A DNA stretch of 64,000 bases, taken from the NCBI GenBank assembly GCA_001179505.1, contig CDMY01000227.1, positions 186,001-250,000 of the forward strand, written 5' to 3'. The DNA comes from Vitrella brassicaformis CCMP3155 (taxonomy: Eukaryota; Protista; Chromerida). Below the pieces are notes generated by a model that was given only the letters and a program-made list of their open reading frames with translations, made no database searches and had not been told where the DNA came from. The stretch's first letter is position 1; every line of letters begins with the position of its first letter. Below are positions 7,777 through 17,900 of the stretch, piece by piece. Both the position numbers and the translations under genes were made by a program.

Positions 7777-9694
7777 TGTGTGCAGAGCGGGAGTATGAGT
7801 CCGCGGGTGGCGACAACATAGCCTGGTTCGACAACCAGAGTGGCTGGCTCAAAAACGTGGTCATCTTCGACGGACTCAGCAAGAGGTCAAGGAGCGAACC
7901 ACACATAAGCACGGGACTTCATGGACCTATGGACGTATGTGTCTCTCTCGGGCATGGATGCAGCTGGGTGGCCTTCGAGGACCTGCCGTGGGTGTGCAAG
8001 CCGATGGCCAAGTTCAGCATATCGCACAGGGGCAGAGCGAAGCTCAAGGCGCACAAGGGGGGAGGATTCAAGATACGCATGAGGACAGCACCGTCTGTGA
8101 CCACACTGCGCAACAAGGACGCCATCGTGCCCGCTGTAGACGGTCACTTCAGTATGCATGGAGCTGTCACGGACAAAGATATAATATCACTCGGTTGCCG
8201 CCCTGCCTCTATCAGATGACGTGTTTGGTGGTTTTCACGAGGAGTGGGACGACAAAGGGCATCCCCTTGCTCGCGTCGGCTCCGACCTGGCCTTCGAGCG
8301 ACACACCGCCGTACTCGCAGGTGCGTAGAGATGCAGACAACAACCGAAGGCTTATCCATCAATCACTTCCGGCTGTCTCTTTCTCTCCCTCCCTCTTAGG
8401 TGACAAGATAGTGCTCATGACCGGCTACTGTGAGCGCACGTCGTCGGGCGAGCGCCGCGGCGGCACCAGGACGGTGATCTTCGACACGGTCACGGGCCGG
8501 TTCACCACCCCGTCCTTCGCCCCCCCACCCACACCACACACCCTCCCCTACCAGGGCCCCGCCACCAACGCCGCGGCCGCCGTGTGGACGGGGAGTGAGG
8601 TGATAGTGTACGGCGGGGCAACCATGCTGCACCCCATGTACGACTTCCACTACCACCCGCCGGATTCGTGCTGCCCATCCGAGTCCAGCTGCAGTGACGA
8701 CGAGAGCGAGACGGAGTCGTCCTTGTCGGACGGCTTCGGCTACAAGTACAAGTTTCCACACTACAGACCCAAGTACCGCAAAGGCGAATTCGTGACGGAC
8801 GACTTCTACGACGATGAATTTGAGGACTTCACCAGACACGGGCAGCCCAAGGACGCCACCATCAGCGTGCTGGGGGTCATCGATGGCAAGACGGGACAGC
8901 AGCTCGTGCCTGTCGACAGACAACAGGAGGTCGGTACGATTGCTCTTCAAACATGTCGACGGAAATGCCTCTTTGACGTGTGTGTCCTGTGTGTCAGGTG
9001 TCGTCTTTCAGCGATCGCTACGCGACGGACAGCGCCTGGTGGCAGGAGTTCCACCTCGACGATGCGGCGACCGAGGCACTCATCGATGAGAGGTGGGAGG
9101 CTTTCCGCGCACAGAGGAGGCAGGAGGCCCTGATGGACAGGGAGACACGAGGCGAGCAGGAGGGGGAGGGGGATAGCGACTCAGCAGAAGAGGAGTCTCA
9201 TGACAGGTGTGGAAACCATGACTGAATGGATGGACACGCGCATAGGCTAGTATAGGTCATTGCATGGGTGTGGGTGTGTCTCCGTCTTTGTCCCGTGGTG
9301 TGGTGCAGCAAGGTGTTTGGTCAGGAGAGGAGACCCACACGCTTTCAACTTATCACCAAGTTCTACCCACGAATCGGGTACATACGCGAGACACTATGGA
9401 CGCCTCCCGCACCACGTGCTGCGTGCCTTCTTCAGGACGGTCCGCAGCGATTACGTCTTGTCGTCCCGTGGTGCGTTGCCTGTCTCTGTGCCGGCCCCCG
9501 ACAAGAGCAGCAGCGGCAGCAGCAGCGACACGAACAAGAAGGTGAGCAAGATGCAGCCAAAGGGAGGCAGTAGTGGCAGTGACGATTGCGATATCGATGC
9601 CAATGGCGACGGCGGTGGGGGGTGTCATTATTGGGGAGGGGAGGAGGGGGGTATTGCGTGCTGGCTGTGGGATGGTGGAGAGGGCATGAAGTAG
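6056..9694 (+). CDS. F-box-like / Kelch-repeat protein (multi-exon)
   Basis: The spliced N-terminus VHPYLDGIELLKGPDKVSKALRDTVNAGDGLWQTQYHRSF is F-box-like. Kelch blades: RSRPCLFMMGDYLYVFG, HPHGFVLLFGGRD, PLPRLNHTATLVRDRFVFIIGG, AAAAVWTGSEVIVYGG. Splice phases were consistent at the junctions I checked. Confidence 0.7.
7528..7571 (+). repeat. Perfect 22-bp tandem duplication (ggaactggttcttgacttgcag x2) inside a 50-nt intron
   Basis: Read directly: copies at 7528-7549 and 7550-7571, each ending in CAG. Confidence 0.9.
7741..7785 (+). repeat. (TC)9(TG)12 microsatellite directly abutting a splice acceptor, representative of introns across the window
   Basis: tctctc...tgtgtg...tgCAG|AGCGGGAGTATGAG. 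Confidence 0.85.
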
Positions 9695-10350
9695 ACACCA
9701 GCTCAACTCTCGATGGGTTGCACTCATGGGCGGTACGAGTGTGAGTGTTTGTGCTACAAAACGGCAGCGCGTTCATGGGGATATTGCTCGATCACAGGTC
9801 AAATTCATGCAGACATGTACATACACTGACATCAGTGGCGCACACCTATCGATGGGGTCATCACTCACCAAATCTACCATCCACCAACCCACTAGCCGGT
9901 TGTCCATCCATCCATCCATCCATCGACTGACTGCAGCACAACACACTCCATCCGCCCACCCACCTCCCGCTTTGGGGAGGCAATAGGGAATTATTATTGA
10001 TTTCGCGAGCCAACACAACACAACACACCAACCAGCAGCACATCTATCTGATCTGCACCTACACCCATCCATCGCATGCCTCCGATCACAGTGACACCGC
10101 GGCCCAGACCAGACCAGCCCACCCCGGTCACTCTACTTCGTGTCCCTTCTTCTTACTTACATGCCCCAGATAGATAAACTGACACAACCAACCAACCAAC
10201 CAACCAACACACGCCCAGCTAACCTATGGGAAAAACCAGCAGCATCGATCGCATCCTGCCTGCCTGGTGTCTCGTCTAGACTACTGTCCACCCCCAGCCA
10301 CGCCCACAGAGACGGACGACATGACGTGCCTACACACAGGAATCTACCTA

Positions 10351-13300
10351 CTACGTCGGCTGCTTGAGCTCACTGACGGCAGTCACGCTACTGCTGCCCA
10401 TGGCGGCCTTGGCGGGAGCTAGACCGCCACCGCTGCCGCTGCGCTTCGACCGCCGGTGGCTGTGGGGTTTCAGCCTCACCAAGGCATTCACGCTCCTCCC
10501 TGCCGCATCCGTTGTCGACGATGGGGCCTCTCCCCCGTCAGCCGAGGGAGCCGTGGGCAGCGGTAAGTTGGGGTTGATGATCGTGGGGCCGCTGACAGAC
10601 GATGCCGTGAGAGACAGGGGAGGGGAACTGAGGGCTCTGGACCGACGGCGCTGCTCCCTGTCCACTCGTCTCTGTGTGGGGGTCATGGACTCGCCCCCAC
10701 TCTCCACGCCACTCCCTCGGCTGCTGCTCTTAACGCGCGCGTGATGTGGCCGCATGGGCGGGATGAGCCCTGGAGAGAGCGACCGAGGGCTGCTCGAGGG
10801 GGCCCTAGGCGGTTTCACTGCTGCTGCCGCTGTGGCCGATTCCTGCTGGCCTCTCTGCCTCAGCTGGTCCCTGGTGCCGCTGCCGCCCGTAGTGTTGCTC
10901 ATGCAGTCGTCAGCCAGCGGAGGGGCCGAGACATCTCCGTCACACATGACAGTGGGTGGCATCATCCGCGACGAGGGAGAGGGCGACGACCGGGTGGTCA
11001 TGGCGTCGCCCTTGTCATTGACAGGGATCATCTCTTCGAGGCACAGGACGACCTTGCGCGATGCAGTGCGGGGGTGTAGCGCGGGCGAGGGAGGTGTGGG
11101 GGTGGATGGGGGGGTTGGCGGGTCGTCAGGGTCTTCGGTGACAAATTGGGATGGCTCCGCGAGAGTGGCCACTGATGTCGTGCTGGCGGGGGACACCATG
11201 TCGTCACACGCCGTCGTGTTGGAGTGAGAGTCCTCGCCCCCCCCTGACCCTCCAGCATTGCCACTGCCATTGCCGTTTTCTTCCTTTGCCGGTCCCTCCG
11301 TGTGTTGCTCATTCGCGGCCAGCATCATGCCCATGGCCCCCTCTCCCTCGGTGCCAAAAGTGGGGGTGGGCATCTCACTCGGCGTGTGGGGGGAGGACGC
11401 GCCCCCGTTGGTGTAGTAGTACGCCCCACAGTGGCGGGCATATCTGCCCAGCTCGGTCGTGATGCCGTCGCCCTCCCTGATGCTCTTGGACGACGCAGAG
11501 GCGGAGAGCAGGGTCCTCTGCGCGTCGTCTGCCGCTGTGGCAGCGGCCTTCTTGGCCCTGCAGCGGCGGATGATCACGACGATAGCGATGATCATGACGG
11601 CGAGGAGGCCCTCGCCGCTCAGCAGCACCCACACCCATGCTGGGATGGACGAGGACTCGTGCTGGGCGTGGGTATCGTCTCCTGTTTTGCCGCTCTTGTC
11701 GGCGTCATGGTGGTCGGTGAGCATGTCCGCTGACGCGAAAGGCGGGTGGGCGGAGTCGATTTCGAAGAGCGACTGCTGGTGCAGTGCTGAGAGAGGCGAC
11801 TGGACTGCCGACCTCCATTGCTGCGTGATCGAGGGAAGCCGGATGGCCTCGATGCGGTCCAGTACCACACTGACACGAAAAAAGAGGGAGGCAAAACAAG
11901 CGTTGTGAGGATGGATGGCATGTTGTGGGGCTTCCATCCATCCATACCGTATAACAACGATGACAGATCCTTGTCTGAAGGCTTCGACGGTCACCGCCCG
12001 CGGCGAGACGTCCAGGGTGCGAGCCACAAGACCCACCAGCTGACGACTGATGCTCTCGCGCAACGAATCACTCTGCAGACAAATCCCACACAGGGTGATT
12101 CATGAGTGCACATGTGTTTATGAGGCCATCTTCCCCTCCTTCTAACCTTGATGACTTTGCTGTACTCGTAGTTGGTCAGCCTGAGGCTGAGCAGGTGTGT
12201 CTCGCCCACCATCTCCCCTGCACTTCCACCCACCTCCCCAGTGAAGACATGGGGGTCCTCCCTGGCCAAGGCGGCCGACCCACCGGCAATGATGATCTCC
12301 TTCGGCAGTGACGTCACGGGCGTTGCCGTCGGCTTGCTCCACCGACCGTCGGGCGCACGAGATGGTGCGTTGTTGTGGGGATGGTCATGCTGGTCCTCCT
12401 CTGACCGGTTCCTCGCACTAGTGTTCTCTGTCTTGGCTTCCTCCGTTTTGTTGCTGTCGTCCTGTGAGCCCTGCTGCTGCTGCTGCTGCTGGTCCACAGA
12501 CAGGATGAAAGGTCTCTCTGCAGACGCGCTGCCCTCTGCGTCGTCGCCAGGGGTGAGTGCCGGGGATGGCGAGAGGAAGTCCCTCCCCTCTTGTGTGTCG
12601 TTGCCGCTTGCCTCAGCAGGGACAGGAGTGGTGGGCGCCAGGGTGAGGGGGACTGGGCTGGTGGCTTTGGGTGGTGGAGAAGGAGGAGGTGTGTCCCGCG
12701 GCTCTGGGGGCGGCAGCAGGTCTTTCGCAGAAGCAATGACGACCCCTGTGCTCTCGGCCTCCTGTGCGTTGGTCTCCTCGCCTTCACTCACAGCAGGGGG
12801 AGGGGTCGTCGGGATCTCTGCCTGCGTCGCCGCCTCATGTTCATCTTGCTCTCGGTCTTCTCGCTTTGGCTTCTGCTCTTTCGTCGATGCGGTGGGCTCC
12901 TCCTGCTGCTGGCCGTCGTGGTGGGGGAGGTCTCCTCTGCCGTCATCATCTTCTTTTGGACGCATCTCTGTCTTCTCAGCCGCAGCCGCCTCTGTGCCCT
13001 CCTTCGTCTTCTCGGCGAGCCGTTCTTCTCTCTCTTTCTCTCTCCGCGAGCGGCGGCTGGCCCTTGCCTCTGCCTGGATGGAGGGAAAGGTGGAGGTGTC
13101 GGAGCCGTCGCCACGTGCCGCCTGGATCTGCAAGATGGCGTCCTCCTCCTCCTCAGCAGCAGCAGGCTGCGGAGTGGTCGCTGCTGCTGCAGGCCTATTG
13201 GCTGACGTCTTGTCGGCCTTGCTGTCCTTGTCGTCTTTGTTCTGCGCTCGTTCCGCCTCTTCTGCCAGCCTGGCCGCCTCCTCTTGTCGCTCTTCCTGCT

Positions 13301-14606
13301 CCTCCTTTTTCTTCTCTCTTTTTTCCTTTTTCTTGGCGGCGTAGCTGCCCTCGGTGTGGGGAACGGGCATCGATGGCTGGGTGGTGTTGCGGGGGGCCGT
13401 GGTGGGGGTGGGCGGAATCACCTGCACGGACGACTCCTGCGTCCGAGGGGCGGGGTCTGATGGATGGACGGACACATACACACACACACACACACGTGGA
13501 GCGGAGCGTGCGTGTACTGTACGTGGCGGGGCGGGGCGGGAGTGTTCATGCGTTGTGGATGTGTGTGTGTGTGTGTGGTCACCCGTCGTGAGAGGCAGCA
13601 GTGCCACAGCTTCCTTCCTCCTCTCGTCGACCATGTCCTCCCCACTGCCCCAGATGAAGAGCCCCGCCTGCCCGCCCTCGACCACCACATTCTCCGCCCG
13701 AAACACAGCATGGTTGCCGTCGAACGTCCCCGCGTTGGCATGCCACCTCTTGGCGTTGAGCTTCTTCTTGCTGAAAGTGTCCTCGTACAGCGACTCGTAC
13801 GCGAAGCGCAGCGGCAGGAACTTCCACACGCGGGCGTAGTTGATGACCGACGCGGCAGCGAGGGAGGCATGAGATGATGGGGGTGTGAATGTGCCGGCGT
13901 ATGTGGCGAGGGAGGGCGAGACGGGCCAGGTGGCGATGCGCAGGTGCATGGGTGTGTCGAAGTGCTTGGCCACGCTCATGCCCTCCCGGCGAATGAGCTG
14001 CCCGTCGACGTAGAACTCAATGGCGTCGTTCATCCACTCGATGGCGAACCAGTGGAACGGCGACAGGAAGAACTCACCGGAGCCGTCGGAGCTCTCAGTG
14101 ACCATCCCATTGTAATACTCGCTGTAGTAACTCTCCTCCCGCGCCCCAAGAGCCTTGGCGCCCGACTTGTCGCGCCTGCCGGCCAGCACTGTCGGCCGCG
14201 AGCTGTCCTCGAGGGATGGCGGAGGTGGCGGTGTCGGGAGCGGCAGCGGGTAGATGGCATCCTTCCTTTTGGAGCCGTAGATGACATTGGTCTGGATGAA
14301 CGGCCGGTTGGTGTCCCTGTTCATGACCTCCATGCTGATCTCCCGCCATTCGTCGCGGCCGTCCCGCCCGTTGGATGGGTCGGCGAGGTAGACGGCCGTG
14401 ATGACTCCGGGAGAGTCAGACGGCTTCAGCTGGCACTCAAACCGCCCGTACCTGAAGGCATCCTGCGACTGGATCTCCGCCGCTGTGAAGGGTTTCTCCG
14501 ACACCGGCCGCGTCTTGGGTGCCCCATGGCCTGAGAGGGCTGCGAGAAGCCACACGAGTGCTGACCAGACAAACGGCCGAAAAACGGTACTATGCTGGGG
14601 GGACAT
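10351..14606 (-). CDS. Type I membrane protein: signal peptide, circularly permuted GH16 (lichenase-like) domain, charged low-complexity stalk, SEA-like module, TM helix, Ser/Pro-rich cytoplasmic tail
   Basis: Signal peptide MSPQHSTVFRPFVWSALVWLLAALSGHG. GH16 motifs FRYGRFECQLK, EWREISMEV, FHWFAIEW...FYVDGQLIR, INYARVWK, then YEDTF...RWHANAGTFDGN. VTVEAFRQGSVIV is SEA-like. TM helix IPAWVWVLLSGEGLLAVMIIAIVVII followed by the basic stop RRCRAKK. Confidence 0.8.
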
Positions 14607-14988
14607 GTCCGCTGGCCGCGATGGAGCCGCGCAAGGCTCCACGTACCCTCAAGCCATCGTCTTCACGCCCAAAATCGTTTGGCGAGCTTAGCTCGCAGTG
14701 ATTGTTTACAGTGTACGCACGACCTGCCGTTAGCGGCGGGAGATTCGTGATTTCGGCAGTCAAAGACCGCACGAGCGAGGAGGCAAGCACTGCCGCACTA
14801 ATTAGTGAGGAGAGAGGAGGCTGTCTGCGTCGACACACCCATCGGTCGACGCCCCCTCCACTCTCACTCGACATCAGCACAGCACGCCACTTCCGTCTAC
14901 GCACTCCAGACTGTCCGGCAAGCGATACAGCAACACCCAGCCAACCGCAGCCAGCATAGATCAGCTGTGAAGTGACCCCACTCTCTCC

Positions 14989-17900
14989 ATGACGCGGCCA
15001 CCTCCGCGTCGGTGCTGGTCAGCCATCCTCCTATGCGGCCTGGTGGCCGTTGCCGCCGTCAACGCGCAGCAGCAGCAGCAGGGTGTCGGCGGACGCGTGG
15101 GCAACTTCCTGGGGCGCTCCGCTGCGGGCATCCAGAACATCCTCGAAGGTGAGATCACGGGGGTGAAGCTGCTGCAGCCGTTGGTGCCTCATGCATTGTA
15201 CGGGGGACCTTTGTGTGTGTCTCGTGACTGCAGGTAGCATCCTCGACCCCGCCTACATCGGTGCAGGCATCAATGCTGCCGCCCAGACAGCCACAGGTGC
15301 CGCCACCTTTGCCGCCCAGACAGCCACAGATGCCGCCACCACTGCGGGCAAGATGGCCACAGATGCCGCTACCACTGCCGCCCGGACTGCTACAGATGCC
15401 GCCACCACTGCGGGCAAGATGGCCTCAGAGGCCGGCAACCAGATCGCCTACGGCGCCTACCAGGGCCTCCAGGCTGCCGAGGGCGTGGCACAGATGGCCG
15501 CTGTCCAGCTCAACGAGTTCGTCAGGGATCCGCCAACCATCAGTGACATCCGCCAGGAGGCCCGCGGCATGCGCAAGAAGCTGAGCGAGGCCGAGATGAA
15601 GGTCAGGGACAGCGTGGTGTCCCGTCTGGCTGGCGGCGAGCGCGAGTCGGCCATGGGGATCATCAGAAGCATCGGGCCTCTTCGCTCGCCTGCCGTGCTG
15701 GCGGGGGTGGTGGAGGACCTGGTCGGCAAGGAGGACGAGAAGAGCCCCGAGAGATCCTCTCTCGACATCCTCGGAGATGTAAGCAACCTCACACACATAC
15801 TTTTAAGGACTCCTTGTCCATCTGCATGTCCATTGTGTGTCTGTGTTGTGTATGTGTGTCGATCCATCCATCCGTCGATCAGCTGCTGACTGAGCTCCTG
15901 CAGGAGTCCCCCGTGGACACGCAGGCTGCAGCTGCCGCCATCGGCGCGTATTTGCAGTCTCCCAAGCTGCCCGAGAGCGCCGTGTTGGCAGAGTTCATGG
16001 AGCCCTTCATGAACTCCCTCACCGCTGACAACGCCACCAGCATGGCCAAGCAGATCGTCGAGAACGTCGCCGGCACTGAGGCATTCGACACGGTCAGTCA
16101 CTGCACGGCACGCACGCGCACACGTCCCCGGCCATCACCATGGATGGCTTCGTGTGTGGGCGTGTCGTCTAATGTGTGTGGTGCAGGCGCTGGATCTGAT
16201 GAAGCCTCTGGGTTTCGGCGACGTGGTTCCTGAGATGCTGACGAGCATCATGCCCAAGCTGTCGCCCCCCGACATGCTCGCCTTCACCCAATCCGTCACA
16301 CAGGCCATGCCCGTCAAGGAAGCTTCCAAGGTCTTCACCGACGTCCTCGACGGACTCGTAAGCATGACACACACGCACACGAACCAGCCAAGTCCCCCAT
16401 CCCACCAGCACCCACCAAACGTGTCTGTGCTGCGTGTGTCCATCCATTAGGTGTCTGAGAAGGACAGCAGCGGGGTCGCGGCGGCCGTGACCGCCCTTGT
16501 GGCGGCGCTGCCCTTCACGGCCGACAAGAATAGCACAAGTGAGGACGAGGGCGACATCATCACCCTGCCCTCTCTCCTGGGCGAGATGCTCCCCGCCGTC
16601 AAGCCTGACACTCTCACCGCCACCGCAGCGCAGCTCCTCATGCTCTTCGAGATTCCCGCGTTCGCACAAGTCATGGGTCAGTCAGAGGCACACACACACA
16701 CACAAACACACACTGCACATGCGTTTCTCTCCCTTGTCCGTCCAGCGCCGGTCGTGAAGGAGGCCGAGTCGCCAGCCAAGTTTGTCAACTCGCTGGTGGC
16801 TTCGCTCGAGAGCATCCTGGCCCCCAACGAGCTCACCGAGGTCGTGAAGGCGATCCTCACTGTGCCGTCGCTCGCCGAGAAGGAGCTCATCCAACCAGTA
16901 AGTGCACCCATCACCATCGACTCCACTGCTCCACCTCAGGCCGTGTCTCAGGTGCTCGAGACGCTCACCGGCGAGATGACGTCGGCAAAGGAGGCTGAGG
17001 AGGGCGGCCGTCCTGCCCTGGTGTCGCTGATGAAGGGCATCTTGACCGAGAGCGACATCACCAGCCTCCTGGACTTCCCGTCAAGGGTCAACATCATGAA
17101 GAGCACGCTCGAAGCCGTCCCCGACGAGCAGTCATTCATCAGTAAGGAAGGCCTCCACTCACTCCCTCCACAGCACTGGCGCCACATGCACACATCTCGC
17201 CTCCCTCGTGTGTCTCTCCCCCCCACCCCACCCCACCACCCTGACAGAGGAGGTTGTGGCTGGTTTCAACGACAGCGACACCAGCATCCCGCAGGAGGTG
17301 GCTAACCTGCTGGGCGGCCTGCTCGCCAAGCCGTCGATCGTGGAGGTGTACCCCACGCAGCTGGTCAACCAGATCGTGTGGAACACCGACCCCACCAATC
17401 TCTCCAGGAGCCTCAAGCTCATCGCCCGCGACCTGCCCGCGGCTATCGGCAACGCCACGGAGCCCATCCAGAAGGTCACCAGCCACGTACTGGCGGCCTC
17501 ACCTGTCGCTGCGGACGACATCAAGGAGGTGCTCGGCGAGATGAGCGAGAAGCTGGGTGCTGAGGCGGTGGTTGAGAGCGTTGTCGGAGCGCTCCAGTGG
17601 CCCAAGTCGGAGGACGAGGCTCGTGACTATATCAACGACATCCTCGGTGAGTGCCGCGCACGGGACAGCTGTGCATTCCGCAGTGGATGTGTGTCGTGAT
17701 GTGGTGTCTTGTGTGTGTGCAGGTGGTCTGTTGAAGTTGGGTGATCCGTCGCTGATCCACGACCTGATCGCCAAGCTGGTGGACCACCTGCCCGGCAAGG
17801 AGGTGCTCCACCTGCTGGACCCCTACCTCAAGCTGCTCGACCCTGCCGACCTCGAGAAGGTAGGTGCCCACCCATCCCACTCCCCTCACCCCCCACGCTA

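What the first reader, a model, noticed from the sequence alone, without database searches (positions are those of the whole stretch)
13650..14500. Circularly permuted, Fibrobacter-type GH16 domain in a eukaryotic cell-surface protein
Seen: the domain begins at KPFTAAEI...YGRFE. The segment normally N-terminal in Bacillus lichenases (YEDTF...RW...GTFDGN...ENVVVEGG...LFI) comes after INYARVWK. Established: this order matches the natural circular permutant 1,3-1,4-beta-glucanase of the rumen bacterium Fibrobacter succinogenes (DFSGAEL...YGKFE...FINWVKVY...DNFD...RW...WTFDGN). Inference: a horizontally acquired bacterial permutant has been repurposed as the ectodomain of a single-pass membrane protein. 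The domain itself is intron-free, unlike most of the surrounding genes.
Basis: partly seen in the sequence, partly recalled or inferred. Interest (0 to 1): 0.72.

Follow-up and report, generated by a model that had tools for sequence, protein, structure and literature searches.

The report
Permuted glucanase head on algal surface protein
The alga Vitrella brassicaformis (a photosynthetic relative of malaria parasites) makes a membrane-anchored, mucin-like surface protein whose tip is a bacterial-type beta-glucanase domain with the rare "circularly permuted" chain order. This copy has lost one conserved catalytic residue, so it may bind sugar chains rather than cut them.

Summary
Window 13647-14495 (minus strand) encodes a GH16 domain that is colinear with the naturally permuted Fibrobacter succinogenes lichenase in sequence (E ~5e-15) and in a predicted model (TM 0.85-0.88).

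It is exon 1 of a four-exon Vitrella brassicaformis gene, public protein CEL95334.1 (1325 aa). The layout is signal peptide, GH16 head, ~415-aa acidic/Pro-Thr-Ser stalk, SEA-like module with a G-S-V-I-V motif, one membrane helix and a 400-aa tail. Two spliced transcript contigs match the exons 100%.

"Fibrobacter-type" is too narrow. The permuted order marks a large bacterial clade: 106 of the best 150 relatives, and 392 loci in Cytophagales, Sorangium, Cellvibrio and other genomes. Vitrella has at least six paralogues that group together weakly, and no donor can be named.

This copy is the most divergent of 107 family members. Its catalytic motif reads E-I-S-M-E (Asp to Ser, where 99% have Asp) and it carries a unique ~51-residue loop insert. 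I read it as a domesticated, probably catalytically weakened, glycan-binding head on a mucin/SEA-type surface receptor.

The scan had already found this family on other DNA of the same genome. No paper in the library mentions it.

The parts
13583..14658 (-). Exon 1: 5' UTR, start codon at 14606-14604, signal peptide and the whole GH16 domain, ending in phase 1
   Evidence: Transcript contig L001 positions 1-1076 match at 100% identity. The translation equals residues 1-341 of P0173.
14529..14606 (-). Signal-peptide-like N-terminus (residues 1-26). The cleavage site is judged by eye only.
   Evidence: Read from the sequence. No predictor was run.
13647..14495 (-). Circularly permuted GH16 beta-jelly-roll domain (residues 38-320)
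   Evidence: Pfam PF00722; colinear with 1MVE and 3AXD; model and fold search.
14328..14342 (-). Catalytic-strand motif E89-I-S91-M-E93. Both Glu are kept and the central Asp is replaced by Ser.
   Evidence: The family alignment has Asp in 99% and the E/D/E triad in 101 of 107 sequences.
14055..14285 (-). Enlarged loop (residues 108-184): 77 residues against a family median of 26 and a maximum of 42. It is Pro-rich and modelled with low confidence.
   Evidence: It is present in the transcript contig, so it is not an intron.
13647..13817 (-). The segment that is N-terminal in normal-order lichenases, here at the C-terminal end of the domain (residues 264-320)
   Evidence: pLDDT 94-97.
13457..13582 (-). 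Intron 1 (126 nt, GT..AG, with CA/GT dinucleotide runs)
   Evidence: Absent from L001.
13409..13439 (-). 31 nt kept in the public gene model but missing from transcript contig L001, with no GT-AG ends. Their removal would shift the reading frame.
   Evidence: Unresolved.
12147..13456 (-). Exon 2: acidic, Pro/Thr/Ser-rich stalk with five N-x-S/T sequons, a Lys/Glu/Arg-rich stretch at 13209-13340, and the first strand of the SEA-like module
12073..12146 (-). Intron 2 (74 nt, GT..AG). It changes the reading frame, so splicing is required.
   Evidence: Absent from both L001 and L006.
11948..12072 (-). Exon 3 (core of the SEA-like module)
11956..11970 (-). G813-S-V-I-V motif at the turn between strands 2 and 3 of the SEA-like module. 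This is the position of the self-cleavage site in animal SEA domains.
   Evidence: Read from the sequence. The model has strands at 54-60 and 64-72 with G62-S63 between them.
11870..11947 (-). Intron 3 (78 nt, GT..AG)
   Evidence: Absent from L001 and L006.
9654..11869 (-). Exon 4: end of the SEA-like module, membrane helix, cytoplasmic tail, stop codon at 10351-10353, and 3' UTR to at least 9654
11731..12203 (-). SEA-like juxtamembrane module (residues ~760-866, spanning introns 2 and 3)
   Evidence: Model pLDDT 84. VIA-align gives Z 8.8 to the MUC16 SEA domains 1IVZ and 7SA9, 8.3 to the TMPRSS6 SEA domain and 8.0 to 2E7V. There is no Pfam SEA hit.
11569..11637 (-). Single transmembrane helix (residues 898-920), followed by R-R-C-R-A-K-K
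   Evidence: It is the only hydropathy peak in the protein.
10354..11568 (-). Cytoplasmic tail (~405 aa, Ser/Pro/Ala/Gly-rich, no known domain)

Best explanation
SHOWN. The stretch is exon 1 of a nuclear, spliced and transcribed gene of Vitrella brassicaformis (public protein CEL95334.1, 1325 aa). The protein is a type I membrane protein. It has a signal peptide and a GH16 domain in the circularly permuted chain order. After these come a long acidic, Pro/Thr/Ser-rich stalk and a membrane-proximal module with an SEA-type fold and a G-S-V-I-V motif. It ends in one membrane helix and a long disordered tail. The permuted order and the junction between the old ends are shared with a large bacterial clade that includes the Fibrobacter lichenase. 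Vitrella has at least five further paralogues. Two of them (P0001, P0013) have the same SEA-like module and membrane anchor.

INFERRED. (1) An ancestor of Vitrella took an already permuted GH16 gene from a bacterium. The gene multiplied and was fused to eukaryotic surface-protein modules. (2) This copy keeps both catalytic Glu. It has replaced the near-invariant central Asp by Ser, several cleft aromatic residues (W to Y or G) and other conserved residues, and has gained a ~51-residue loop. It has therefore most likely lost most or all hydrolytic power. I propose that it works as a beta-glycan-binding head held away from the membrane by the stalk. (3) The SEA-like module may cut itself at G813/S814, as mucin SEA domains do. 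Pull on the bound head could then be sensed or released, and the tail would pass the signal on. That would make it a cell-wall or matrix tether and sensor rather than a digestive enzyme.
For: Permuted GH16.

Gene model: the four exons, translated separately, are exact pieces of P0173, and transcript contigs L001 and L006 match at 100% with the same GT-AG introns.

Organism: JGI sample 3300017297, which holds L001, also encodes exactly the Vitrella CCMP3155 protein CEM31690.1. P0173 itself is named V. brassicaformis.

Broad bacterial clade: 106 of the best 150 relatives are colinear with the query, and there are 392 confirmed loci in bacterial species genomes.

Paralogues and their architectures. 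In the careful tree all six Vitrella sequences sit together, and the query is sister to P0001.

Divergence of this copy: Asp to Ser where 99% have Asp. It departs from the consensus at 18 of 49 conserved columns (family median 5, next highest 15) and at 6 of 20 near-invariant columns (median 0). Its loop has 77 residues against a median of 26. Its sister paralogue P0001, also membrane-anchored with the SEA-like module, has lost the acid/base Glu (E-D-T).

SEA-like fold.
Against: - Both catalytic Glu are intact, so reduced or altered activity, including transglycosylation, is not excluded. No assay exists.
- Support for a single Vitrella clade is weak (31/32; 66/62; 68/72), the branches are long, and no bacterial sister is resolved.
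- The SEA assignment rests on a model built from two sequences, middling Z scores (8-9) and a short motif. Pfam's SEA model does not match.
- Transcript contig L001 lacks 31 nt (13409-13439). That would put the GH16 part out of frame with the rest.
- I could label the origin of only a few of the 150 relatives. Chromera, colpodellids and dinoflagellates were not specifically surveyed.
Confidence: 0.55

Rival explanations
1. It is a working, membrane-tethered beta-glucanase or transglycosylase. The Glu pair does the chemistry. The Asp to Ser change, the altered aromatic residues and the extra loop retune the substrate, for example towards the alga's own wall glucan or a bacterial exopolysaccharide. 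The stalk only positions the enzyme.
For: E89 and E93 are kept, as are W87, W191, W227, W288, Q105, N107 and R206. The fold is modelled with high confidence. The ORF is intact and the gene is transcribed. Three Vitrella paralogues in the alignment keep the full E-D-E triad.
Against: The central Asp is present in 99% of the family. This copy is the most deviant of 107 sequences at conserved positions. Its closest paralogue has lost a catalytic Glu outright, which suggests this membrane-anchored sub-lineage is leaving catalysis.
Confidence: 0.3
2. The GH16 part and the downstream stalk, SEA-like module and anchor are not one protein. The mature mRNA lacks the 31 nt at 13409-13439. The product would then be a secreted GH16 domain with a ~210-residue out-of-frame Arg-rich tail, ending at codon 553.
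For: The only transcript contig that spans this place (L001) lacks the 31 nt, and its GH16 frame then runs to a stop after 553 codons.
Against: The 31 nt have no GT-AG ends. The second contig, L006, carries two other small deletions (19 and 26 nt) that L001 does not have, so such gaps are contig-specific. With the 31 nt kept, 1325 codons stay open across three introns, and the downstream part needs a signal peptide to adopt its topology. Paralogues P0001 and P0013 have the same head-to-anchor layout.
Confidence: 0.07
3. There was no transfer from bacteria. The family is old in eukaryotes or alveolates and was lost elsewhere, or the permutation arose separately in Vitrella.
For: The Vitrella sequences are at most 36% identical to anything bacterial or environmental. 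They lie outside the well-supported main bacterial clade. A TAG-recoded marine scaffold (P0095), possibly eukaryotic, falls near them.
Against: The junction between the old ends is conserved between the bacterial and Vitrella sequences (P, F, W/Y, D, F, R-W columns), which argues for one permutation event. Bacterial carriers span several phyla and number in the hundreds. I found no other named eukaryote among the relatives I could label.
Confidence: 0.1
4. It is bacterial contamination of the assembly.
For: None beyond the bacterial affinity of the domain.
Against: The domain exon is spliced to three further exons in two transcript contigs. The gene lies on a 678-kb Vitrella contig. G+C is like its surroundings, 0.63 against 0.56-0.64 across most of the window.
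Confidence: 0.01

Closest known systems
Fibrobacter succinogenes 1,3-1,4-beta-D-glucanase (PDB 1MVE, 1ZM1, 3AXD), the classic natural circular permutant of GH16
   Same: The chain order, the jelly-roll fold (TM 0.85-0.88) and the E-x-D-x-E-type strand without a beta-bulge are the same. Both catalytic Glu and many cleft residues are kept (Fs numbering E11, W54, Q70, N72, R137, W141, W198).
   Different: Identity is only about 19-30%. Fs D58 is Ser here. Fs F40, W148 and W186 are Tyr, W203 is Gly, N139 is Ala and the N44/E47 loop is replaced. There is a 51-residue extra loop. The protein is eukaryotic, from a spliced gene, and membrane-anchored through a stalk. It is not specifically related to Fibrobacter in the trees.
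Vitrella paralogues CEM00815.1 (P0001: GH16, PAN, SEA-like, TM) and CEM38970.1 (P0013: GH16, 6 PAN, 3 C-type lectin, SEA-like, TM)
   Same: They share the permuted GH16 head at the N-terminus, the SEA-like G-S-V-I module next to a single membrane helix, and a long tail. P0001 is the nearest relative in the careful tree.
   Different: This protein has no PAN or lectin domains and carries a long acidic, low-complexity stalk instead. Identity within the GH16 domain is about 27-28% to these two (about 28-36% across all five paralogues). The catalytic change is different: D to S here, E to T in P0001, none in P0013.
Animal membrane mucins and SEA-domain surface proteins (MUC1, MUC16, TMPRSS6)
   Same: The layout is the same: an extended, probably glycosylated stalk, then an SEA fold with a G-S-V-[VI]-V turn next to the membrane, then one membrane helix and a tail.
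   Different: There is no sequence-level (Pfam) SEA match. The head is a glycoside-hydrolase fold. Self-cleavage is untested. The organism is a chromerid alga.
Eukaryotic GH16_21-related genes of bacterial origin (Neocallimastigomycota lichenases; charophyte EG16-2 derived from alphaproteobacterial ExoK; PMC6827312, PMC8711696)
   Same: These set a precedent for bacterial licheninase-type GH16 genes entering eukaryotes and being put to use on cell walls.
   Different: Neither paper describes those genes as permuted. They are soluble or wall enzymes, not heads of membrane receptors. Neither paper mentions Vitrella.

Membership tests
Glycoside hydrolase family 16 (Pfam PF00722) | Match to the family profile above its curated cutoff | tested here: met
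   70.5 bits against a cutoff of 22, E 1.6e-19. The same holds for the full protein.
Glycoside hydrolase family 16 (Pfam PF00722) | Beta-jelly-roll fold | tested here: met
   Model pLDDT 82 and pTM 0.84. 96 PDB matches have E <= 1e-3, and all of the top 50 are GH16 structures.
Glycoside hydrolase family 16 (Pfam PF00722) | Complete catalytic motif E-x-D-x-(x)-E | tested here: not met
   The motif reads E-I-S-M-E. Both Glu are present and Asp is replaced by Ser, where 99% of 106 relatives have Asp.
Naturally permuted (Fibrobacter-type) GH16 clade | Catalytic half first, with the strands that are N-terminal in normal-order lichenases placed last | tested here: met
   Colinear with 1MVE chain residues 2-234 and with 106 permuted relatives. 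19 normal-order relatives map in the rotated order.
Naturally permuted (Fibrobacter-type) GH16 clade | Same junction between the old C- and N-termini | tested here: met
   The conserved junction columns are shared: F/Y263, F/Y270, W/Y274, D276, F278, R287, W288.
Naturally permuted (Fibrobacter-type) GH16 clade | Placement inside the clade on a tree | tested here: inconclusive
   The query and the Vitrella paralogues lie outside the 95%-supported main bacterial clade, on long branches. The backbone of the careful tree is unsupported. Holding the Vitrella and Fibrobacter-like sequences together gives p-AU 0.059.
Licheninase (EC 3.2.1.73; CAZy subfamily GH16_21) | Hydrolysis of beta-1,4 bonds next to beta-1,3 in mixed-linkage glucan | not testable with these tools
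   This needs an enzyme assay. The subfamily is described in PMC6827312.
Licheninase (EC 3.2.1.73; CAZy subfamily GH16_21) | Sequence-network link at CAZy's subfamily threshold (E 1e-55, PMC6827312) | tested here: inconclusive
   The best E-value to any relative is 2.7e-17. It comes from a different method and database size, so it cannot be compared directly.
SEA domain | Match to a Pfam SEA profile | tested here: not met
   No SEA family was listed for the exon read-through at E <= 10 or for P0173 at E <= 0.1.
SEA domain | Alpha/beta sandwich fold, placed next to the membrane | tested here: met
   Model pLDDT 84. Z is 8.8 (rmsd 3.2 over 111 residues) to 1IVZ, 8.8 to 7SA9, 8.3 to TMPRSS6 and 8.0 to 2E7V. 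The Z values are middling, but 7 of the top 8 rows are annotated SEA-containing chains and the other is the membrane-proximal part of the SorCS2 ectodomain.
SEA domain | G-S-V-V-V-type turn between strands 2 and 3, and self-cleavage there | tested here: inconclusive
   The G813-S-V-I-V motif is present at that turn and is conserved in P0001 and P0013. Cleavage cannot be tested here.
Gene acquired from bacteria | Broad in bacteria, patchy in eukaryotes, and integrated in the host genome | tested here: met
   392 bacterial loci. Only Vitrella proteins were named as eukaryotic among the 20 relatives looked up. The gene has spliceosomal introns and lies on a 678-kb contig.
Gene acquired from bacteria | Eukaryotic sequences nested within a named bacterial group, with support | tested here: inconclusive
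   The sister group is unresolved.

The most novel reading that the evidence does not exclude
Chromerid algae have built a family of cell-surface wall or matrix sensors from a domesticated bacterial enzyme. The permuted GH16 head has become a non-catalytic glycan grip (Asp to Ser here, Glu to Thr in the sister gene). It sits on a mucin-like stalk with a self-cleaving SEA module that turns pull on the wall into a signal through the long tail. This would be an independent, alveolate version of animal signalling mucins and fungal wall-integrity sensors.
Probability: 0.3. Interest if true: 0.65.

Novelty: new variant of a known kind. Interest (0 to 1): 0.5.

Why it matters
Natural circular permutation of the GH16 jelly-roll is a textbook case known from one rumen bacterium. 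Here the same permuted fold turns out to be common in bacteria. It has also been taken up by a eukaryote close to the apicomplexan parasites, multiplied, and welded onto mucin-, SEA-, PAN- and lectin-type surface modules.

This copy shows an enzyme fold apparently drifting towards a binding role. It gives a concrete, testable example of how transferred bacterial enzymes become eukaryotic receptor parts. It also extends SEA-type juxtamembrane modules to an alveolate alga. The protein is in public databases only as an unnamed "GH16 domain-containing protein", and no paper in the searched library mentions it.

Tried and rejected
1. Word-based protein search with the domain alone and with the 883-aa ORF gave nothing. 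The reason emerged later: the public 1325-aa protein sits in a 90% cluster whose representative (P0172, 955 aa) lacks the GH16 part. The blanks therefore meant nothing, and my passing idea that the gene was unannotated was wrong.

Transcript contigs found through the look-up of encoding contigs stood in for it.

3. My first guess that the ORF read-through at 13457-13582 might be coding was rejected. It is an in-frame intron.

4. An intron inside the enlarged loop was considered, because a GTGAGT lies at about 14076. It was rejected because the transcript is continuous there.

I redid it with a 16-sequence alignment.

6. Pfam and NCBIfam gave no SEA or other domain for the C-terminal 980 residues.

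7. The metagenome scan seeded with the Vitrella clade found nothing above 36% identity.

8. The AU test of Vitrella plus Fibrobacter-like sequences as one clade gave p 0.059, so that grouping is not rejected.

9. Literature searches for Vitrella with GH16, for Vitrella with SEA domain, and for Fibrobacter glucanase with Asp58 returned nothing. What I say about the role of the central Asp therefore rests on the conservation count and on my own recollection of lichenase mutagenesis, not on a paper I read.

Each exon was translated and checked by reference, and whole-protein analyses used the public protein P0173 that a tool returned.
Full report
**What is there.** The minus strand of the window carries an 883-codon ORF, 11991..14642. 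Its first third is a GH16 domain (Pfam PF00722, E 1.6e-19). Against all solved structures, the six best sequence matches are the Fibrobacter succinogenes 1,3-1,4-beta-glucanase, the classic natural circular permutant. They are aligned colinearly from ORF residue 47 to 336 against chain residues 2-234 (E 4e-15 to 5e-14). In normal-order relatives the same stretch maps in front of the catalytic half.

**Gene model, expression and organism.**
- The C-terminal ORF led to P0172 and its contig L001, a 4.7-kb JGI transcript-like contig. L001 matches the window at 100% in blocks 14658-13583, 13456-13440, 13408-12147, 12074-11948 and 11870-9654.
- A second contig from another JGI sample, L006, covers 12970-9660 with the same two downstream introns.
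- The three introns are 13582-13457, 12146-12073 and 11947-11870. All are GT..AG.
- The 90% cluster of P0172 also holds P0173, which is CEL95334.1 / A0A0G4EH43, "GH16 domain-containing protein" of Vitrella brassicaformis CCMP3155. It has 1325 aa and lies on a 678-kb contig.
- Translating each exon separately by reference gives exact pieces of P0173: residues 1-341, 343-778, 779-819 and 821-1325. Whole-protein work used P0173.
- The JGI sample that holds L001 also encodes exactly the Vitrella protein CEM31690.1. This independently ties the window to Vitrella.

**One open point.** L001 also lacks 31 nt (13439-13409). These have no GT-AG ends, and their loss would shift the GH16 frame relative to the rest, giving a stop after 553 codons. 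L006 has two other small deletions (19 and 26 nt) that L001 does not share. Such gaps are therefore specific to single contigs. They are either artefacts or minor forms. Keeping the 31 nt leaves 1325 codons open, and two paralogues have the same head-to-anchor layout. I therefore take the fusion as real (about 0.9), but only reads can settle it.

**Structure.** A model built from an alignment of 107 permuted family members has pLDDT 82 and pTM 0.84. The C-terminal, formerly N-terminal, strands are at pLDDT 94-97. Foldseek ranks nine Fibrobacter lichenase chains first (E 1e-19 to 1.5e-21, TM by target 0.83-0.88). The engineered permuted Bacillus hybrids 1CPM and 1CPN come next (0.81). Normal-order lichenases align only in part, at about 0.5-0.6. 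The C-terminal segment therefore completes the jelly-roll.

**How wide the permuted family is.**
- An exhaustive profile-free search of 1.84 billion representative proteins gave 432 relatives (E <= 1e-3). None is above about 36-40% identity.
- Of the best 150, 106 are colinear with the query and so permuted, 19 have the normal order, and 25 are unclear.
- A scan of one genome per bacterial species with a permuted sub-alignment found 392 confirmed loci in Cytophagales, Sorangium/Polyangiaceae, Cellvibrio and other Gammaproteobacteria, covering the whole permuted domain.
- Named bacterial representatives also include Pseudobacteriovorax, whose protein is colinear with the query. A Fibrobacterota-like MAG carries the related P0089 in the normal chain order.
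- "Fibrobacter-type" therefore describes a broad bacterial clade.

**Vitrella paralogues and phylogeny.**
- Five representatives are Vitrella proteins: CEM00815.1, CEM31690.1, CEM35486.1, CEM38970.1 and CEM01690.1.
- In a 126-row quick tree, 97 permuted rows that include every named bacterial sequence form a 95%-supported clade. The query, the Vitrella rows and four long-branch rows lie outside it.
- In a 61-row careful tree all six Vitrella sequences are together and the query is sister to P0001. Support is weak, however (68/72, 66/62, 31/32), and the backbone is unresolved.
- Forcing Vitrella together with the Fibrobacter-like sequences costs 23 log-likelihood units, with p-AU 0.059. This grouping is disfavoured but not rejected.
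- A metagenome scan seeded with the Vitrella clade found nothing above 36% identity.
- The nearest ESM Atlas clusters are bacterial, plus one phage cluster.
- Transfer from bacteria is the economical reading because of four things: the distribution, the shared junction residues, the introns, and the fusion to eukaryotic modules. Donor and date are unknown.
- One neighbour, P0095, sits on a Tara Oceans scaffold with three in-frame TAG codons read as Gln. Its owner is unknown, so I cannot say that Vitrella is the only eukaryotic carrier.

**What is special about this copy.**
- In the 107-sequence alignment both catalytic Glu (E89, E93) are kept. The central Asp, present in 99%, is Ser.
- Other near-invariant positions also differ: G96N, P193N, W236Y, P250A. 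So do F73Y, W274Y, N225A and W198F.
- Mapped on Fibrobacter numbering through the alignment, the changes are D58S, F40Y, N139A, W148Y, W186Y and W203G, with a rebuilt N44/E47 loop. E11, W54, Q70, N72, R137, W141 and W198 are kept.
- The protein departs from the consensus at 18 of 49 conserved columns (median 5, next highest 15) and at 6 of 20 near-invariant columns (median 0). It is the most deviant of all 107 sequences.
- The loop between N107 and H185 has 77 residues, against a median of 26 and a maximum of 42. It is unique among the Vitrella paralogues, is modelled at low confidence, and is present in the mRNA contig.
- The E-D-E triad is intact in 101 of 107 sequences. The exceptions include this protein (E-S-E) and its sister P0001 (E-D-T).

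**The rest of the protein.**
- After the head comes a ~415-residue stalk rich in Glu, Ala, Pro, Thr and Ser. It has five N-glycosylation sequons and a Lys/Glu/Arg-rich stretch.
- Residues ~760-866 give no Pfam hit. They nevertheless fold confidently (pLDDT 84) into a strand, helix, strand, turn, strand, helix arrangement, with G813-S814 at the turn.
- The best structural matches are SEA domains: MUC16 1IVZ and 7SA9 (Z 8.8), TMPRSS6 (8.3) and 2E7V (8.0). SEA-like juxtamembrane modules of EpCAM, IA-2, dystroglycan and Notch follow.
- These Z values are middling, so I call the module SEA-like. The G-S-V-I-V turn is also present before the membrane helix of P0001 (G-S-V-I-V-L) and P0013 (G-S-V-I-A-L).
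- One hydrophobic helix (residues 898-920) and a ~405-residue Ser/Pro/Ala/Gly-rich tail follow.

**Most likely working.**
- Shown: a secretory signal, an outward-facing permuted GH16 head, a stalk, an SEA-like module, one membrane pass and a tail. The gene is transcribed and spliced.
- Inferred: the head binds a beta-linked glycan of the alga's wall or surroundings. With the Asp gone and the cleft remodelled, it probably cuts poorly or not at all.
- Inferred: the SEA-like module may self-cleave and act as a force-sensitive link, and the tail relays the signal.
- The main rival is a working tethered glucanase or transglycosylase with changed specificity.

**Comparison with what is known.** The GH16 subfamily roadmap (PMC6827312) and the XTH-origin study (PMC8711696) report bacterial licheninase-type genes in anaerobic fungi and charophytes. 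Neither paper mentions Vitrella. The roadmap does not mention permutation or Fibrobacter at all, and the XTH study mentions circular permutation only in general terms. No paper in the library holds both "Vitrella" and "GH16".

**Earlier scan notes.** Earlier notes of this scan had already reported this family on other pieces of the same genome. I confirmed the parts I could check: the paralogues, their PAN/lectin/SEA-like architectures, and the Glu to Thr copy.

**Verdict.** This is a real, correctly described feature. It is one more member, and an unusual one, of a Vitrella family of permuted bacterial-type GH16 proteins. It is a new variant of a known kind and of moderate interest.

Noticed in passing
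window 13409-13439, 11548-11566 and 11151-11176 (contigs L001 and L006): JGI transcript contigs of this gene each lack short stretches (31, 19 and 26 nt) that the genome and the other contig keep. None has GT-AG ends, and the 19-nt one lies between CCGCTGC direct repeats. They could be assembly or reverse-transcription artefacts, or tiny non-canonical excisions.
   Followed up: partly
L086:97-1158 (Tara Oceans scaffold, protein P0095): A permuted GH16 gene with a signal peptide and a His-rich tail. It has three in-frame TAG codons translated as Gln and ends at TAA. Its catalytic triad reads E-D-N. It falls near the Vitrella sequences on long branches. The owner is unknown; a TAG-recoding protist or phage is possible.
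   Followed up: partly
L085:1546-8695: A bacterial MAG contig carries three GH16 genes within 7 kb, next to a gene with the Fibrobacter-specific Fib_succ_major domain. One of them (P0089) has the normal chain order, yet groups loosely with the permuted Vitrella sequences.
   Followed up: no
P0001 (CEM00815.1), residues ~120-130: The closest paralogue has E-I-D-I-T, so the acid/base Glu is replaced by Thr. It carries a PAN domain, the same SEA-like module and a membrane anchor. Two membrane-anchored copies have thus each lost a different catalytic residue.
   Followed up: partly
window 13209-13340: A ~44-residue Lys/Glu/Arg-rich stretch in the extracellular stalk resembles ER/K-type single alpha-helix spacers, which would be unusual outside the cell. 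A second such stretch lies further down the stalk.
   Followed up: no
window 14649-14657: The 5' UTR seen in L001 holds a minimal upstream ORF (ATG GCT TGA), 50 nt before the main start codon.
   Followed up: no
window 15191-15889 (+ strand): The neighbouring ORF contains tandem peptide repeats of the type T-A-T-D-A-A-T-T-A-G-K-M-A. I did not examine its nature.
   Followed up: no
protein clusters of P0172 and P0173: The full-length public protein is hidden in a 90% cluster whose representative is a shorter, 5'-truncated gene call from a transcript contig. Both large protein searches therefore missed the GH16 domain of the window's own gene. Other 'absent from databases' readings in this genome may have the same cause.
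   Followed up: yes
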